IMG/VR virus record: IMGVR_UViG_3300003322_000571
Span: 124,001 to 188,000 of that record
Reading direction: 5' to 3' (one strand)
Length of the DNA stretch: 64,000 nucleotides
The position numbers and the translations under genes are program-made. Under the pieces are notes generated by a model that saw only the letters and a program-made list of their open reading frames with translations, made no database searches and was not told the origin of the DNA. This document shows positions 23,099-60,492 of this stretch, one piece after another (positions within the stretch are counted from its first letter, which is position 1; each line of letters begins with the position of its first letter).

Positions 23099-23116
23099 CA
23101 ATCAACGGAGTGCGAA

Positions 23117-23410
23117 ATGCAATTCTCGAAGGAACAGCTGATCTACATCGCGAGCAGCCTCGGCAACATGGACGTTGACTTCATGAAGCAGCTGGCGTGG
23201 GGAATGGTCGCCAATCACGCGGAAGTGATGGCGGAAATCTCCGAAAGCAGCGACATCCATACGCTGCCGAACACGAAGGACACCAAGGAACACGTCAAGG
23301 AGTACCTGTCCGACATGTTCCCGGAAATCCTCACGAAGCTGAAGGAGGAGATCGACGCGTGCCCGATCAACGTCAAGTACTCGTGGAGCGTCGACGTCAA
23401 GATGGAATGA
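23117..23410 (+). CDS. Acidic hypothetical protein
   Basis: GGAG RBS. Confidence 0.75.
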   Translation: MQFSKEQLIYIASSLGNMDVDFMKQLAWGMVANHAEVMAEISESSDIHTLPNTKDTKEHVKEYLSDMFPEILTKLKEEIDACPINVKYSWSVDVKME

Positions 23411-23527
23411 TGGACGGGGCCGGCTCAGGGGCAAGGGAGGGAGGAGGTGCCTGAGCGGTCAGGTGGCGATCCCGTCTCTCCCTGACCAGAGTCCGTCTAT
23501 AATACCGGAATCCATGCAGGAATGCAA
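23410..23527 (-). ncRNA. Candidate sRNA with anti-SD loop, with promoter
   Basis: TTGCAT-17-TATTAT; two 7-bp stems, loop CACCTCCTCCCTCCCTTGCC. Confidence 0.5.
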
Positions 23528-23639
23528 CGCCCATTAATAATGAGCTTGCAGTCCAGTATGGTATTGCTCTTTCTGTTGACTGTCTGATTTGTGCACTTAA
23601 TAATCTGCACAACTTAACAACCAACAGAAAGGGTCAATC

Positions 23640-23816
23640 ATGATCGTCGACAACTTCACGCGAGATATCCCCCAAGAAGACGAAAACCTGTCGCCGGCAC
23701 TGGGTGCGATGATGGGTGTGCTCGCCATGCCGCACCAGTACAGCCGTTTCGTCAACGACACGATGCTGTCGCTCAACATGCAGTGCCCGCAGTCTGCGCA
23801 CGTGATGGAAAAGTGA
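23640..23816 (+). CDS. Small hypothetical protein (58 aa)
   Basis: AAGGG RBS; fills the cassette. Confidence 0.6.
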   Translation: MIVDNFTRDIPQEDENLSPALGAMMGVLAMPHQYSRFVNDTMLSLNMQCPQSAHVMEK

Positions 23817-23820
23817 ACTG

Positions 23821-23858
23821 TTGACTTGTCGGCCGGATGGGAGTATTATGCTCCCATC
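23821..23858 (+). promoter_or_regulatory. Hairpin promoter class A
   Basis: TTGACT-17-TATTAT; GATGGGAGTA-TTA-TGCTCCCATC (T-G wobble). Confidence 0.85.
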
Positions 23859-23879
23859 GGTTAACAACCAGGAACACAA

Positions 23880-24275
23880 ATGTTCAAGACCACCCTGCAG
23901 AACATCCACGAAGTCGACGAGAGCGATTTCGGCTACGGACCGCACGTGTACGGCCTACTGCTCGAAGCGCAGGCCGAAGAGCTGGAAGTGACCGTCGTGC
24001 AACGTGTAATCGACAACGGCAACCCCGCGCACGACAATTACGACATCGTGCTCGATAACGGCCTGAAGGTCGATGCGGTGAGTGGTTACCACCTTGCCGA
24101 CATTCACAACTTCGTGGAGAATACGCACGAGTCGCAGTTCTGCCTCGCTGTGCAACATGGTGTCGATTTCGATCACGGTGTGTGGTCTGAACGGATCGAG
24201 TCCATGCTGCGCGATGCGGAGCAGAATCCGCATATTTCCATCTCGTACGAAACGACGTACGCCATTTCCAAGTGA
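23880..24275 (+). CDS. Acidic hypothetical protein
   Basis: AGGA RBS. Confidence 0.75.
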   Translation: MFKTTLQNIHEVDESDFGYGPHVYGLLLEAQAEELEVTVVQRVIDNGNPAHDNYDIVLDNGLKVDAVSGYHLADIHNFVENTHESQFCLAVQHGVDFDHGVWSERIESMLRDAEQNPHISISYETTYAISK

Positions 24276-24283
24276 AGGTCAAC

Positions 24284-24529
24284 ATGAAAAAGCACAACGG
24301 TTTCACGCTGATTGAACTGTTGATCGTTCTCGCGATCATCGGTATCCTGCTGGCAGTGGCGTTGCCTGCATGGCACAACTACCGCAACAACACCGCAGAA
24401 CCGAGCGGCCGCTACGGGCAGATCGGGCACGACCAGCCGCAAGCAGAATACGAATGCCGCGCTGGCGTTGTGATGAAACGCGACGGCAAGGCGCTGAAGT
24501 CGAGCAACGGCTCGATCGTGACCTGCTAA
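24284..24529 (+). CDS. Short type IV pilin-like protein
   Basis: MKKHNG/FTLIELLIVLAIIGILLAVALP prepilin motif with E5; C-terminal Cys pair. Confidence 0.9.
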   Translation: MKKHNGFTLIELLIVLAIIGILLAVALPAWHNYRNNTAEPSGRYGQIGHDQPQAEYECRAGVVMKRDGKALKSSNGSIVTC

Positions 24530-24549
24530 TACAAGTTACCTCCCTGTTT

Positions 24550-24590
24550 GGGCCGGGTTGAGCGCAAGCTCCCCGGCTCGTTTTTTATTC
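24550..24590 (+). terminator. Intrinsic terminator
   Basis: GGGCCGGG..GAGC-GCAA-GCTC-CCCGGCTC plus T tract. Confidence 0.8.
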
Positions 24591-24630
24591 CGAATCCAGC
24601 GCAGCAAACACACCTTCCCACTTTCCAAAT

Positions 24631-24659
24631 AGCATACGGCAAACTAGATGGTTTGGCAA
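24631..24659 (-). promoter_or_regulatory. Antisense sigma70-type promoter
   Basis: TTGCCA-17-TATGCT on the minus strand. Confidence 0.5.
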
Positions 24660-24725
24660 GTGTGGAAAGCCCTATTGTCCGTCTATCTCGTTTGGTGTAT
24701 ACTTGGTCATCAAGTGGAGATTTAG

Positions 24726-24851
24726 ATGCGACTCGTTGCTTACGTACTGATCCTTGGTTTTGCGTCGGGGTTGCTCGCACGCAATCCGTACATCGGTGCG
24801 TTGGCGGGAGTTGTGTGCTGGATCGTTGACACAATCATCAACAGGGAGTAA
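24726..24851 (+). CDS. Small membrane peptide (41 aa)
   Basis: GGAG RBS; MRLVAYVLILGFASGLLA... Confidence 0.55.
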   Translation: MRLVAYVLILGFASGLLARNPYIGALAGVVCWIVDTIINRE

Positions 24852-24853
24852 TC

Positions 24854-25048
24854 ATGGCACTCGTCATCACAATCATTTCCGCACTGATCCTTGTGATCGG
24901 CGGCATCGGTGCAATCGTTGGCGTTCTCGTTGGCGCAGCGTGGTGGGCGGGAGCGCTCACTGCGCTGATCAGCACGGTCGTGTTCATTATCATCCTGGTC
25001 GTCAGCCTGCTCGTGCTGGGATTCGCCAAGATGGACTCGTTGATCTGA
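24854..25048 (+). CDS. Very hydrophobic small membrane protein
   Basis: Two long TM helices. Confidence 0.75.
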   Translation: MALVITIISALILVIGGIGAIVGVLVGAAWWAGALTALISTVVFIIILVVSLLVLGFAKMDSLI

Positions 25049-25075
25049 ACAGCGAGACAGGTTACAATTGATCCC

Positions 25076-25327
25076 ATGAGTGGATATCTTGGTAACCCGG
25101 ACGCAGAGTCCGAACACGCACTGATCCTCGCTGAGAACGGGATCGATGCGGCACGTGCAATGTTGGCAGGTCCTGTTCTGGAAGACTGTCAGAACTGCGA
25201 TGAGCCGATCGATCCGAAGCGAGTCGCTGCGCTCCGTGCAAACGGCATGAAGTGCATGTACTGCATTATTTGCCAATCGAAGTTTGACGCTGCACCAAAG
25301 ATCAAAATGCTTGACCGCATCCTGTAA
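25076..25327 (+). CDS. TraR/DksA-type C4 zinc-finger protein
   Basis: CQNCDEPIDPKRVAA...CMYCIICQ; no DksA N-terminal extension. Confidence 0.85.
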   Translation: MSGYLGNPDAESEHALILAENGIDAARAMLAGPVLEDCQNCDEPIDPKRVAALRANGMKCMYCIICQSKFDAAPKIKMLDRIL

Positions 25328-25365
25328 GTGTGGGATAGTAGTCACATCAACAACTGAGGTGCAAC

Positions 25366-25626
25366 ATGCCTGCGATCAACATCTCCAACGAACTCGTCCG
25401 TGCCATCAATGCTGTGTGGGACTACATCGGTTCCGACTGCGAGCAGTGCGCCAATGAGTGCGGTGAAGAACTGACGAACGAGATGGCCATTGAGAGCTGC
25501 ATCGACGCCGATCGCCTGAAGACGAACGGTCACAAAGCTGCTGACAAGGAACTCCATGCGCTGATCGAGCAGCACGGTTACGGCCCCGTTGCCAAAGCCC
25601 TCGAGAAGAAGATCAGCCTGGCCTGA
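25366..25626 (+). CDS. Hypothetical protein
   Basis: GAGG RBS. Confidence 0.75.
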   Translation: MPAINISNELVRAINAVWDYIGSDCEQCANECGEELTNEMAIESCIDADRLKTNGHKAADKELHALIEQHGYGPVAKALEKKISLA

Positions 25627-25630
25627 TCTG

Positions 25631-25661
25631 TTGACAAAGCTAGTGTCCTACGGGACACTAG
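25631..25661 (+). promoter_or_regulatory. Hairpin promoter
   Basis: TTGACA-17-GACACT; CTAGTGTCC-TACG-GGACACTAG. Confidence 0.65.
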
Positions 25662-25691
25662 TAAACATCAACACAGTCACAGGTAAACATC

Positions 25692-25913
25692 ATGCCGATC
25701 ATCACTGCCCACGAGCTCGCTCGTCAACTGCTTGCGCAAGGCGACTACGAAGTGTGCTTGCTTGACGAAGGTGCAACGCACGGCTGGAGTATCGGCTCTG
25801 TTGTCTCTTGCCAAGGTCGGAGTGATGATTCCGAGCTGACGAAACCAATGGTCGTCATCACGATCGGCAACGGTCTGACGGAACTTCTTCCAAAACCGGA
25901 GCGTATGCAATGA
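25692..25913 (+). CDS. Hypothetical protein
   Basis: Cassette ORF. Confidence 0.7.
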   Translation: MPIITAHELARQLLAQGDYEVCLLDEGATHGWSIGSVVSCQGRSDDSELTKPMVVITIGNGLTELLPKPERMQ

Positions 25914-26212
25914 CAAGCGAAATGTTCAACAATGAGCCGACCGAGGAGCGGAAGGCGAAGCTTGAGCAGTTGCTCGGGCGGATGGAAGCTCCCGACGTGA
26001 TCGCGAAGCAATGTCAGATGTCGCACGCTGCGGTGTTCGCTCTGATCAACGCTCGGTCGTACACGGGGTTCAACAAGTGGTGGGCCCAGCAGGTCAGCGG
26101 CAGGCGTGCGATGCTGATCAACGACAAGTGGGCACTCGCAGAGGCTGCATATAGCGCAGGCCGTGAGGCACTCGCCGAAGAGATCGCGAAGTTGCGTGAT
26201 CAGCCGTTGTAA
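25910..26212 (+). CDS. Hypothetical protein
   Basis: Coupled ORF. Confidence 0.7.
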   Translation: MTSEMFNNEPTEERKAKLEQLLGRMEAPDVIAKQCQMSHAAVFALINARSYTGFNKWWAQQVSGRRAMLINDKWALAEAAYSAGREALAEEIAKLRDQPL

Positions 26213-26309
26213 TGTAGCAACTACAACACTCCAAAGGCAACAGGGCACTGCCCTGTTGCCTTCGCTGGTCAATTGTGCGATACTGGCTTCATTGTAATAA
26301 GGAGCTGAT

Positions 26310-26606
26310 ATGAGCCGACCGACGTCAGAAGAGATCCGCGCATTCGCTGCTCGTATGGAGCAGAACGACTTCTTTGAGCTCGTTGCTCATCATATGCTGT
26401 TCGTCGAGCAGGCGATCGCGACCGATGCGTTGGCAACAGAGCTCGACGCTGACGATACGTACAATCGCTCGTTGGCTCAGGAGCTGTTCCACGACCCAGA
26501 GTACCTCGCAAACTGCTGTGAGGCAACGCTGTCTGGCATGGGGTTTGAAGAAGCTGTCGTCGAGCAGCTGAAGCTGCTCGCTCCGTCGTACGTTCGGCCC
26601 CGTTGA
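26310..26606 (+). CDS. Acidic hypothetical protein
   Basis: AAGGAG RBS. Confidence 0.75.
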   Translation: MSRPTSEEIRAFAARMEQNDFFELVAHHMLFVEQAIATDALATELDADDTYNRSLAQELFHDPEYLANCCEATLSGMGFEEAVVEQLKLLAPSYVRPR

Positions 26607-26657
26607 TCAGTTTGGTCATTTGGGCGATACTGGACGCATTCAATCAAGGAGCGAGCT

Positions 26658-60170: not shown

Positions 60171-60242
60171 GGGGGATTAGTATAGCTGGGAAAACACCGC
60201 CCTTGCAAGGCGAAGTCACCGGTTCGACCCCGGTATCCTCCA
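60171..60242 (+). tRNA. tRNA-Ala(UGC), CCA not encoded
   Basis: Acceptor GGGGGAT/ATCCTCC with G3-U70, loop CTTGCAA, T-arm ACCGG-TTCGACC-CCGGT. Confidence 0.92.
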
Positions 60243-60392
60243 CAGTATCTCAAGAAGGCCTGTTAGTACGTGCTCTAAGCGTCTTCTTTCACTGACTCGC
60301 ATAGAATGCAGAGAAACATCACGTAAATGTCTCTGTAGACCACTAGCGAAAGTCGTTTAGTCGATGGTTACGGTGCAAGCCCGGAACAAAAT

Positions 60393-60466
60393 CGGAGTAT
60401 AGCGCAGCCTGGTAGCGCAACTGCTTTGGGAGCAGTGGGTCGGGAGTTCGAATCTCTCTACTCCGA
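60393..60466 (+). tRNA. tRNA-Pro(UGG), CCA not encoded
   Basis: CGGAGTA/TACTCCG acceptor, loop TTTGGGA, GTTCGAATC T-loop. Confidence 0.95.
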
Positions 60467-60492
60467 CATAATATAACACAGCGAGATTGTAC

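What the first reader, a model, noticed from the sequence alone, without database searches (positions are those of the whole stretch)
24284..24590. Phage-encoded truncated type IV pilin
Seen: an intact prepilin cleavage/methylation motif (G/FTLIE) and hydrophobic helix, but only about 50 aa of head domain ending in a Cys pair, followed by a terminator in the early region. Established: prepilin peptidase processes this motif, and pili are common phage receptors. Inference: a dominant-negative pilin that poisons pilus assembly for superinfection exclusion.
Basis: partly seen in the sequence, partly recalled or inferred. Interest (0 to 1): 0.65.

Follow-up and report, generated by a model that had tools for sequence, protein, structure and literature searches.

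The report
Phage mini-pilin with disulfide knob
A 350-kb lytic jumbo phage carries an early gene for an 81-residue "mini-pilin", made of a bacterial type IV pilin anchor helix, a floppy linker and a small phage-only knob closed by two cysteines. It belongs to a widespread, unstudied phage family that most likely sabotages the host's type IV pili, which many phages use as receptors.

Summary
Window 24284-24529 (+) encodes an 81-aa protein with a canonical prepilin motif (MKKHNG|FTLIE; Pfam N_methyl E 4e-11). It is the only such gene in a complete 350,089-bp phage genome, and a conserved hairpin-plus-U-run terminator follows at 24550-24589.

It is not a decayed or accidentally truncated pilin. 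It belongs to a conserved family of 74-101-aa mini-pilins. At least 53 of the 150 best 50%-identity cluster representatives in the profile search belong to it. Each member has three parts:
- a type IVa major-pilin-like leader and alpha1-N helix (E5 in 53/54, P22 in 51/54);
- a variable S/Q/T/P-rich linker;
- a 24-residue C-terminal module, C-x-x-G...G-x-Q...G-x-G-V-x-C.

The module is under purifying selection. It was not found in about 800 sampled bacterial genomes. Every gene context I could read that held a member with both cysteines looked like a large lytic phage. One cultured member exists: Synechococcus phage BUCT-ZZ01.

The phage encodes no prepilin peptidase and no pilus machinery. 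The most likely mechanism is inferred, not shown. The host peptidase processes the protein, which then joins the inner-membrane pilin pool and acts as a non-productive subunit that disables type IVa pili, giving superinfection exclusion. A 2026 paper noted truncated PilA in lytic Pseudomonas phages and made the same untested proposal. This is therefore a new variant of a known kind.

The parts
23821..23849 (+). Sigma70-like promoter (TTGACT-17-TATTAT) upstream of the two-gene unit
   Evidence: 10/12 match. The region holds 16 such sites against 2.4 expected. One search shows the genome-wide cluster of such sites at 140-180 kb. This is a consensus match only; the transcription start is not shown.
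23880..24275 (+). Upstream gene, 131 aa, unknown function (phrog_21475). It is probably co-transcribed and translationally coupled with the mini-pilin.
   Evidence: Its stop codon lies 8 nt before the mini-pilin ATG. The orthologue keeps the same position in L015 and L018/L019.
24275..24278 (+). Shine-Dalgarno AAGG, 5 nt before the ATG
   Evidence: Read directly from the sequence. Conserved in L015.
24284..24529 (+). Mini-pilin gene, 81 aa plus TAA (P0001)
24284..24301 (+). Class III (prepilin) leader MKKHNG, ending in Gly-1. The predicted cleavage and N-methylation site lies before Phe at 24302.
   Evidence: PF07963 and TIGR02532. The leader is 5-6 aa in 39/54 family members. Cleavage itself is inferred.
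24302..24385 (+). Alpha1 helix (mature F1 to about residue 28), with E5, G14, P22, W24 and Y27. Inner-membrane anchor and filament-core segment.
   Evidence: AF2 helix at residues 9-34, pLDDT 87-95. A PDB profile search matches only this part; the best hits are type IVa PilA and geopilin at 62 bits, against GspG at 31 bits.
24386..24445 (+). Low-complexity flexible linker (residues 35-54)
   Evidence: pLDDT 50-62. 15 non-synonymous against 2 synonymous codon changes versus L015, plus an indel. Length varies 15-42 aa in the family and the composition is S/Q/T/P/G/N-rich.
24446..24526 (+). C-terminal module (residues 55-81): Cys58-x2-Gly61 ... Gly76 ... Cys81. A small beta unit, presumably closed by a disulfide in the periplasm.
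   Evidence: C58, G61 and C81 are invariant in 54 sequences. 7 synonymous against 4 non-synonymous changes versus L015. pLDDT 75-88 with beta strands at 56-59 and 62-65. Not found in about 800 bacterial genomes. The disulfide is inferred.
24550..24589 (+). Intrinsic terminator: 12-bp interrupted GC-rich stem followed by a U-run
   Evidence: -22.6 kcal/mol, z -2.1. Nearly invariant in L015. The simple scanner did not list it, probably because the stem is interrupted.

Best explanation
The gene encodes a phage 'poison pilin'.

1. It is transcribed early from a host-type promoter.
2. The preprotein inserts into the inner membrane with its basic leader in the cytoplasm.
3. The host prepilin peptidase (PilD type) cleaves it after Gly6 and N-methylates Phe1. 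The phage has no such enzyme.
4. The mature 75-residue protein joins the inner-membrane pool of type IVa pilins. Its alpha1-N helix carries every feature a major pilin uses to dock into the assembly machine and the filament core (F1, E5, G14, P22, aromatic residues at 24 and 27).
5. It lacks the globular head that makes the lateral contacts of a stable fibre. It therefore competes with host pilin as a non-productive subunit: it stalls, caps or weakens filaments and so removes functional surface pili.
6. The flexible linker and the phage-specific knob closed by two cysteines lie in the periplasm. They probably stabilise the protein or hold it at a component of the pilus machine.
7. The benefit is superinfection exclusion: pilus-dependent competitors, and possibly sibling virions, cannot adsorb to an already infected cell.

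Shown here: the motif, the architecture, family conservation, purifying selection on the C-terminal module, phage-only contexts, and absence of phage-encoded pilus machinery.

Inferred: processing, membrane topology, the disulfide, entry into the pilus machine, loss of piliation, and exclusion.
For: **Motif and uniqueness**
- Strong prepilin motif, unique in the genome.
- The family profile scores type IVa major pilins far above the T2SS pseudopilin: 62 against 31 bits.

**No head domain**
- AF2 shows a helix, a disordered linker and a tiny beta unit.

**Conserved family, not a remnant**
- 54 aligned members. F1 and T2 are invariant, E5 is present in 53/54 and P22 in 51/54. C58, G61 and C81 are invariant.
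- The C-terminal module is under purifying selection, while the linker is free to vary.
- The gene keeps its synteny across three divergence levels of the same phage clade: L015, and L018/L019.
- It also occurs in unrelated large phages: L017, L020, L033, L055, L063, L073.
- A cultured T4-like cyanophage carries a full-length member.

**Dependence on the host**
- No Peptidase_A24 and no T2SSE ATPase in the phage genome.

**Context**
- The region is rich in early-type promoters.
- In L020/L021 the next gene is Imm_superinfect, at 63.6 bits.

**Literature**
- Prophage-encoded FimU mimics block pilus-binding phages. The same paper noted 60-residue PilA fragments in six lytic Pseudomonas phages and proposed incorporation or inhibition of assembly (PMC12952977).
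- Several unrelated phage proteins disable type IV pili for exclusion (PMC13436744, PMC8764522).
Against: - Nothing here shows processing, membrane location or any effect on pili.
- The host is unknown. The genome comes from a root metagenome, and the nearest cultured relatives share only about 37% identity in a conserved structural protein.
- The role of the conserved C-terminal knob is unexplained by a pure 'headless subunit' model.
- Pilin stubs of 31-44 aa in cultured phages (PX29, PhiW-14) suggest the helix alone is active. That fits signal mimicry as well as poisoning.
- Band_7/SPFH genes lie beside the mini-pilin in three unrelated phage contigs. This hints at an inner-membrane role not obviously tied to pili.
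- Whether a headless pilin can be pulled from the membrane by the assembly machine is not known.
Confidence: 0.4

Rival explanations
1. Pilin-pool signal mimic. The membrane-embedded alpha1-N helix is read by a host sensor kinase that monitors the inner-membrane pilin reservoir (PilS type in Pseudomonas, PleC in Caulobacter). The cell is fooled into behaving as if its pilin pool were full, and it retracts pili or stops making them.
For: - In Caulobacter the first 17 residues of mature PilA suffice as the signal. A synthetic peptide cut phiCbK susceptibility by 77% within 10 minutes (PMC7196804).
- PilS senses PilA through intramembrane contacts (Kilmury and Burrows 2016, cited as ref. 22 in PMC6058289). 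The details are from my own knowledge, since that paper was not held.
- Cultured large phages carry helix-only stubs of 31-44 aa, which shows the helix alone is kept by selection.
Against: - T4-like phages generally shut off host transcription early (my own knowledge), so a transcriptional route would add little.
- The C-terminal module is conserved and under purifying selection, and this model does not explain it.
- Whether the unknown host has such a sensor is untested.
Confidence: 0.15
2. Pilin-type anchor for a periplasmic effector. The prepilin signal serves mainly to place a small tethered knob in the periplasm. There the knob binds something other than the pilus fibre: an incoming phage's DNA-entry route or tail lysozyme (like T4 Imm and Sp), the secretin, or an SPFH/FtsH membrane complex.
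For: - The C-terminal module is the phage-specific part and is under purifying selection.
- The variable-length flexible linker looks like a tether.
- A conserved Cys pair makes sense only outside the cytoplasm.
- An Imm_superinfect gene is adjacent in L020/L021.
- A Band_7/SPFH gene is adjacent in L017, L055 and L063.
Against: - A simple anchor would not need near-invariant Gly-1, Phe1, Thr2, Glu5 and Pro22 across 54 diverged members.
- Helix-only stubs exist without any knob.
- This genome has no Band_7 hit. The Imm (PF14373) search also found nothing, but it rang in none of the 14 control genomes and is uninformative.
- The module has no informative structural or sequence match.
Confidence: 0.17
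3. Functional decoy subunit. The mini-pilin is built into otherwise working pili, as prophage P-FimU is. It changes or dilutes the surface that competing phages bind, without abolishing piliation.
For: [quoted passage not shown]
- The alpha1-N helix is complete.
Against: - With no head domain there are no lateral contacts.
- A lytic jumbo phage gains little from keeping host pili functional.
- P-FimU proteins are full-length minor pilins with added loops.
Confidence: 0.1
4. The same kind of interference, aimed at another type IV filament: the type II secretion pseudopilus or a competence/MSHA pilus rather than the type IVa pilus. All of these share the prepilin peptidase and alpha1-N logic.
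For: - NCBIfam hits to GspH, GspG, ComGC and ComGE N-termini.
- The phage protein Aqs1 disables several type IV filament systems at once (PMC13436744).
- The cultured family member infects Synechococcus elongatus PCC 7942. My own knowledge is that its pili serve competence.
Against: - The family profile scores type IVa PilA at about 62 bits against about 31 bits for GspG.
- The P-A-Y/W-x-x-Y signature after Pro22 is typical of type IVa major pilins (plus my own knowledge).
Confidence: 0.08
5. A non-functional remnant of a captured host pilin gene, or a chance ORF.
For: It is short and has no head domain.
Against: - Dozens of diverged homologues share the same three-part architecture.
- The C-terminal module is under purifying selection.
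- The RBS, the terminator and the synteny are conserved.
Confidence: 0.02

Closest known systems
Truncated PilA-like proteins (about 60 residues) of lytic Pseudomonas phages, noted bioinformatically in Sztanko et al., Cell Rep 2026 (PMC12952977)
   Same: - Encoded by non-temperate phages.
- Keep the pilin leader and alpha1-N helix and lack the head domain.
- The same two hypotheses were proposed (incorporation or inhibition of assembly), and neither has been tested.
   Different: - The protein here has an additional conserved C-terminal module closed by two cysteines, on a flexible linker.
- It sits in a jumbo phage from a root metagenome.
- I could not compare sequences directly, because that paper's Table S3 is not held.
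- Comparable stubs that I did see are Delftia phage PhiW-14 gp119 (44 aa) and Aeromonas phage PX29 p038 (31 aa).
Prophage P-FimU minor-pilin mimics (F10-like Pseudomonas phages; PMC12952977)
   Same: A phage-encoded type IV pilin homologue that relies on the host pilus machinery and protects against pilus-binding phages.
   Different: - P-FimU is a full-length minor pilin with extra loops.
- It is expressed from prophages, is built into working pili and complements a fimU deletion.
- The protein here is headless, resembles a major pilin in its helix, and belongs to a lytic phage.
Geobacter PilA-N (geopilin domain 1), a 61-residue mature short pilin
   Same: It is among the top solved-structure hits. 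It is a natural pilin reduced almost to the alpha1 helix.
   Different: - Geopilin pairs with a separate PilA-C protein to form a filament.
- No such partner is seen beside the phage gene.
- Geopilin is a host structural protein and has no Cys-bracketed C-terminal module.
Caulobacter CIP peptide / PilS-sensed pilin N-terminus (PMC7196804; Kilmury and Burrows 2016)
   Same: The pilin alpha1-N alone, sitting in the inner membrane, changes pilus function and phage susceptibility.
   Different: Those are the host's own pilins acting as a homeostatic signal. Here a phage would supply the helix. The Caulobacter pilin is of the Flp/Tad type, not type IVa.
Non-pilin phage inhibitors of type IV pili (Aqs1 and Tip on PilB; Pf PfsE on PilC; PlzR on PilZ) and T4 Imm/Sp
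   Same: The presumed purpose is the same: early or prophage-expressed small proteins that prevent superinfection by disabling a receptor or an entry step.
   Different: They have unrelated folds and targets, and none is a pilin homologue. Aqs1, Tip and PlzR act from the cytoplasm. The protein here has no Pfam Imm_superinfect match.

Membership tests
Type IV pilin / pseudopilin superfamily (class III signal peptide; PF07963, TIGR02532) | Short basic leader ending in Gly(-1), followed by Phe/Met(+1) | tested here: met
   MKKHNG|F. PF07963 scores 42.5 bits against a 21.2 cut-off. TIGR02532 scores 38.5 bits against 16.3.
Type IV pilin / pseudopilin superfamily (class III signal peptide; PF07963, TIGR02532) | Glu at mature position 5 and a hydrophobic alpha1-N helix of about 20 residues | tested here: met
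   FTLIE-LLIVLAIIGILLAVAL. AF2 helix at 9-34 with pLDDT 87-95.
Type IV pilin / pseudopilin superfamily (class III signal peptide; PF07963, TIGR02532) | Globular alpha-beta head: alpha1-C packed on a 4-stranded antiparallel sheet | tested here: not met
   Only 47 residues follow the helix. AF2 gives a disordered linker plus two short hairpins. No solved pilin matches beyond residue 44-64. Foldseek finds no head-domain match.
Type IV pilin / pseudopilin superfamily (class III signal peptide; PF07963, TIGR02532) | Cleavage and N-methylation by a prepilin peptidase, and assembly into a filament | not testable with these tools
   This needs expression with and without pilD, plus pilus shearing. The phage encodes no Peptidase_A24.
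Type IVa major pilin (PilA/PilE) | 5-7 residue leader, Gly14, Pro22, aromatic residues at 24 and 27 | tested here: met
   6-residue leader, G14, P22, W24 and Y27. The family profile's best solved hits are type IVa PilA.
Type IVa major pilin (PilA/PilE) | C-terminal disulfide-bonded D-region as part of the head domain | tested here: inconclusive
   Two Cys residues bracket the last 24 residues. The module has no sequence match to solved pilins, and there is no head for it to belong to.
Phage mini-pilin family defined here (alignment A5) | Three-part architecture: prepilin alpha1-N, low-complexity linker, and C-x-x-G...G...C module at the extreme C-terminus; total length 74-101 aa | tested here: met
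   P0001 is a member. C58, G61 and C81 are invariant across 54 sequences. The cultured member BUCT-ZZ01 aligns over its full length, probability 99.2%.
Phage mini-pilin family defined here (alignment A5) | Encoded by phages, not by bacterial chromosomes | tested here: met
   - Every readable context of a member with both cysteines looks phage-like. P0003, which was left out of A5, lacks the terminal Cys and lies beside ribosomal protein genes.
- The C-terminal module profile scores 34.7 bits in the phage's own genome. It gives 0/401 hits in one sampled bacterial order and 1/401 marginal partial hits in one class.
- None of the 80 bacterial loci with the most similar N-termini encodes the module.
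- These are samples, not a census.
Prophage P-FimU | Full-length FimU-like minor pilin encoded by a temperate phage | tested here: not met
   The protein has no head domain. The genome is a T4-like jumbo myovirus with RIIA, topoisomerase II and related genes. Lysogeny genes were not searched for.
T4 Imm (PF14373) | Match to the Imm_superinfect profile | tested here: not met
   P0001 has no PF14373 hit. The whole-genome PF14373 search also found nothing, but it rang in none of the 14 control genomes and is therefore uninformative. The family is present only as a neighbour gene in L020/L021.

The most novel reading that the evidence does not exclude
Large lytic phages, from cyanophages to soil jumbo phages, share a dedicated, phage-invented protein class. 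A universal 'key' (the host-mimicking pilin alpha1-N, admitted by any prepilin peptidase and pilus machine) is fused to a new 24-residue disulfide-stapled knob. The knob docks onto a conserved periplasmic part of type IV filament machines, such as the secretin or the alignment complex, and jams them. That would make it a broad-spectrum off-switch for pili, competence and possibly secretion, acting from the periplasmic side.
Probability: 0.3. Interest if true: 0.75.

Novelty: new variant of a known kind. Interest (0 to 1): 0.6.

Why it matters
Type IV pili are major phage receptors. They also drive motility, adhesion, DNA uptake and virulence in many bacteria.

Known phage inhibitors mostly act on cytoplasmic or inner-membrane parts of the machine: PilB (Aqs1, Tip), PilC (PfsE) and PilZ (PlzR). 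The one characterised pilin mimic, P-FimU, leaves pili working. A headless pilin mimic made by lytic phages would be a different route: sabotage from within the subunit pool.

The family defined here gives that idea concrete, testable material:
- dozens of natural variants;
- a clear three-part design that invites domain swaps;
- an invariant two-cysteine module of unknown target;
- a cultured member, Synechococcus phage BUCT-ZZ01 on S. elongatus PCC 7942, in which the gene could be deleted and host pilus and competence phenotypes followed.

If the knob binds a conserved machine component, it would also be a template for anti-virulence peptides. If the effect needs only the helix, that would show phages exploiting the host's own pilin-pool sensing.

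Tried and rejected
- **Megablast and tblastn against cultured phages.** Megablast of the 5-kb neighbourhood gave no match. tblastn of P0001 and of a 496-aa neighbour also gave none. The genome has no close cultured relative, and the low-complexity filter probably hides the hydrophobic helix. Other family members used as queries did find phage pilin stubs and one full member.
- **Downstream gene as an Imm homologue.** I compared the 64-aa two-TM ORF downstream with the Imm-like neighbour of L021. There was no similarity and no Pfam hit.
- **Fold searches for the C-terminal module.** Foldseek against the PDB found nothing below E = 1. Atlas structure rows are short beta-hairpin look-alikes without meaning. 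The solved-structure profile search matches only the helix.
- **Host inference from bacterial pilin N-termini.** The best matches are scattered over many phyla, so it says nothing about the host.
- **'relatives' and 'of=locus' modes of the genome search.** I worked through genome handles instead.
- **Aeromonas phage GomatiRiver_11 CDS0164.** It looked like a member by eye but matches the family profile only over the helix, so it is not counted.
- **Read laying.** Only contigs were available and there were no RNA runs, so there is no expression evidence. Foreign contigs pile up only on the helix-coding 50 nt. These are other organisms' pilin genes.
- **Complex prediction was not used.** The host proteins are unknown, and any two pilin helices or any prepilin with PilD would be expected to dock. 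A pass would not separate the hypotheses.
- **Kilmury and Burrows 2016** could not be read because it is not held.
- **The costly profile search was used once.** The word search had left the C-terminal half unexplained, and the family and phage-specificity claims rest on relatives.
Full report
**1. What is at the coordinates**

Window 24284-24529 on the + strand is an ORF of 81 codons ending in TAA (P0001). An AAGG ribosome-binding site lies at 24275-24278. The stop codon of the upstream 131-aa gene (23880-24275) lies 8 nt before the ATG, so the two genes look translationally coupled. A sigma70-like promoter match (TTGACT-17-TATTAT, 23821-23849) precedes the pair. Downstream, 24550-24579 folds into a GC-rich hairpin followed by a U-run (-22.6 kcal/mol, z -2.1).

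The protein starts MKKHNG|FTLIELLIVLAIIGILLAVALPAWHNY. It matches Pfam N_methyl at E 3.9e-11 (42.5 bits, cut-off 21.2) and TIGR02532 at 6e-10. Several PHROG families also match, one of them annotated 'pilin'. Gly-1, Phe1, Glu5, Gly14, Pro22 and Tyr27 are all in place. Both a regex scan and an HMM scan of the whole genome find this motif only here.

**2. The genome**

The window is bases 124001-188000 of a single 350,089-bp contig. IMG/VR classes this contig as complete, with direct terminal repeats. It carries RIIA, topoisomerase II, an NAD-dependent ligase, an SbcC-like nuclease and a 982-aa head-tail adaptor. The adaptor's best cultured relatives are Xanthomonas phages Xoo-sp13 and XacN1, Stenotrophomonas phages CM1 and RAS14, and Ralstonia phage RsoM2USA, at only about 37% identity or less.

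The DNA comes from a root metagenome, and related sequence occurs in soil metagenomes. The host is not known.

Sigma70-like promoter matches are strongly enriched around the gene: 16 against 2.4 expected in 5 kb. Of the 54 + strand matches in the genome, 22 lie in 140-180 kb. This is what one expects of an early region read by host RNA polymerase. It is indirect support; no RNA data exist.

**3. It is a family, not a truncation**

The word-based search found a few short relatives that share not only the N-terminus but also the C-terminal Cys...Cys stretch. That left the C-terminal half unexplained, so I ran the exhaustive profile search once.

Among the 150 best 50%-identity cluster representatives, 53 have the same architecture. 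An alignment of 54 members (A5) and simple statistics define the family:
- Length is 74-101 aa, median 84.
- The leader is mostly 5-6 residues.
- Phe1 and Thr2 are invariant. Glu5 is present in 53/54 and Pro22 in 51/54.
- The linker is 15-42 residues, rich in S, Q, T, P, G and N.
- The C-terminal module follows the pattern C-x-x-G-[YFV]-x-[VFLM]-...-G-x-Q-[LMI]-[IL]-x-x-x-G-x-G-[VI]-x-C. There are 20-29 residues between the cysteines, and at most two residues follow the last one in 48/54.
- Cys58, Gly61 and Cys81 are invariant, and Gly76 nearly so.

The closest relative is P0002, at 67-69% identity, on contig L015, which is collinear with the window. Comparing the two genes codon by codon gives three different patterns:

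| Segment | Synonymous changes | Non-synonymous changes | Note |
|---|---|---|---|
| Helix | 2 | 5 | nearly unchanged |
| Linker | 2 | 15 | plus an indel |
| C-terminal module | 7 | 4 | |

So the module is under purifying selection and the linker is not.

AlphaFold2 with the 54-sequence alignment predicts three parts (a shallower alignment gave the same picture):
- a helix at residues 9-34 (pLDDT 87-95);
- a poorly ordered linker (pLDDT 50-62);
- a small beta unit at 56-80 (pLDDT 75-88).

There is no pilin head domain. A profile search of solved structures matches only the helix. Type IVa PilA and geopilin score best (about 62 bits), and the T2SS pseudopilin GspG scores far lower (31 bits). 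Foldseek and the Atlas give nothing meaningful for the module.

**4. Where the family lives**

Every readable context of a member with both cysteines looks like a large lytic phage:
- L017 has T4 RNA ligase 1, polynucleotide kinase-phosphatase, a T4 Y00F-like gene and Cpn10.
- L018 and L019 are collinear with genome 139-166 kb of this phage, with the mini-pilin in the same slot.
- L020 carries DHFR and PrkA/DUF444/SpoVR genes.
- L033, L059 and L062 lie on IMG/VR contigs of 155, 135 and 257 kb.
- Many of these contigs share few or no other genes with this genome, so the family crosses phage lineages.
- A cultured member exists. Synechococcus phage BUCT-ZZ01 (Kyanoviridae) encodes an 83-aa 'hypothetical protein' that aligns with the family over its full length at 99.2% probability.

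A profile of the C-terminal module alone (A6) finds the phage's own gene at 34.7 bits. It finds nothing in 401 genomes sampled from one bacterial order and only one marginal partial hit in 401 genomes of one class. None of the 80 bacterial loci with the most similar N-termini encodes the module. Within these samples the module is phage-specific.

Other cultured large phages carry helix-only stubs:
- Delftia phage PhiW-14 gp119, 44 aa.
- Aeromonas phage PX29 p038, 31 aa, annotated 'similar to N-terminal part of fimbrial protein'.
- An Aeromonas phage protein (GomatiRiver_11 CDS0164) matches only through its helix.

IMG/VR also holds many full-length pilins on viral contigs.

**5. Context clues**
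- The phage has no prepilin peptidase and no T2SSE-type ATPase, so the protein can only work with host machinery.
- In L020 and L021 the next gene is a T4-type superinfection immunity protein (PF14373, 63.6 bits against 27.9).
- In three unrelated contigs (L017, L055, L063) a Band_7/SPFH membrane-scaffold gene lies just upstream.
- Neither family turned up in this genome. The Imm search, however, rang in none of the control genomes and is uninformative.
- The two small ORFs downstream here are predicted membrane proteins with no family.

**6. Mechanism**

Established knowledge of type IV pilins says the following:
- The leader and Gly-1 direct cleavage by the prepilin peptidase.
- The mature protein waits in the inner membrane, anchored by alpha1-N.
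- Glu5 and the helix drive docking into the growing filament.
- The head domain provides the outer contacts.

A protein that keeps every helix feature and has no head is the natural design for a competitive, non-productive subunit. I take this as the most likely mechanism (confidence 0.4). The likely benefit is removal of a common phage receptor early in infection.

The literature supports the general idea but has not tested it:
- Prophage FimU mimics block tip-binding phages. The same authors noted 60-residue PilA fragments in six lytic Pseudomonas phages and proposed incorporation or inhibition (PMC12952977).
- Other phages disable pili through PilB or PilC (PMC13436744; PMC8764522).

Three rivals remain live:
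- The helix alone is a known signal. In Caulobacter, 17 residues of PilA act through PleC and cut phiCbK susceptibility by 77% in ten minutes (PMC7196804). In Pseudomonas, PilS senses PilA in the membrane (reference in PMC6058289). Helix-only stubs in cultured phages fit this.
- The conserved, phage-specific knob on a variable tether, together with the Imm and SPFH neighbours, suggests the knob has its own periplasmic target. In that case the pilin signal might be mainly a delivery device. The near-invariance of Phe1, Thr2, Glu5 and Pro22 argues that the helix is more than an anchor.
- The target could be another type IV filament, such as secretion or competence.

The non-functional-remnant reading is excluded.

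**7. Comparison and novelty**

By motif and helix the protein is a member of the type IV pilin superfamily, but it fails the head-domain criterion. It works like, but is not, a P-FimU. It resembles the 'truncated PilA' class mentioned in PMC12952977 but adds a conserved module. I found no paper describing this architecture.

I therefore rate it a new variant of a known kind. Interest is moderate to high because the family is large, cleanly defined and testable in a cultured system.

Noticed in passing
window about 16000-56000 (genome 140-180 kb), + strand: Sigma70-like promoter matches cluster here. 22 of the 54 + strand matches in the 350-kb genome lie in this stretch, and window 22-27 kb holds 16 against 2.4 expected. 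It looks like a large early region of small genes read by host RNA polymerase.
   Followed up: partly
window 24675-24703, 24726-24851 and 24854-25048: After the terminator comes a promoter-like site (TTGTCC-17-TATACT), then two tiny ORFs of 41 and 64 aa, both predicted membrane proteins. All three features are conserved in the related contig L015. Neither ORF has a family match, and the 64-aa one shows no similarity to the Imm-like neighbour in L021.
   Followed up: partly
window 25076-25327: An 83-aa DksA/TraR-like zinc-finger protein (phrog_54, E 1e-10). It is conserved at the same position in L018/L019.
   Followed up: no
window 60171-60243 and 60393-60467: Two phage tRNA genes: tRNA-Ala(TGC) and tRNA-Pro(TGG).
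   Followed up: no
L017 9093-9641, L055 4189-5004, L063 3770-4564: A Band_7/SPFH membrane-scaffold gene lies directly or nearly upstream of the mini-pilin gene in three phage contigs that share few or no genes with this genome. This genome has no such gene. The recurrence is unexplained.
   Followed up: partly
L021 2033-2215 and L020 2037-2228: A T4-type superinfection immunity gene (PF14373, 63.6 bits) lies immediately downstream of the mini-pilin P0055.
   Followed up: partly
L013 559-840: P0003 is a 93-aa mini-pilin-like protein that has the first Cys and Gly of the module but no terminal Cys. It sits beside ribosomal protein genes L14-L24-L5 on a 2.9-kb contig. Whether the contig is a bacterium or a phage carrying ribosomal protein genes is unknown.
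   Followed up: no
window 24298-24349: In all four metagenome runs, many unrelated short contigs map only to this 50-nt helix-coding stretch, at 80-90% identity, and then run on into unlike sequence. These are other organisms' pilin genes. The phage helix is therefore close to community pilins even at the DNA level.
   Followed up: partly
window 23110 to 26626 (run X1): One 38-nt contig in the probable source run joins 23110 to 26626, skipping 3,515 bases that include the mini-pilin. It has only 29 letters on its shorter side, so it may be an assembly-graph artefact or a rare deletion variant.
   Followed up: no
L188 3001-3252 (Synechococcus phage BUCT-ZZ01, ON615601.1 84785-85036): This cultured T4-like cyanophage encodes a full-length member of the mini-pilin family, annotated only as a hypothetical protein. 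It offers a tractable system for testing function.
   Followed up: partly
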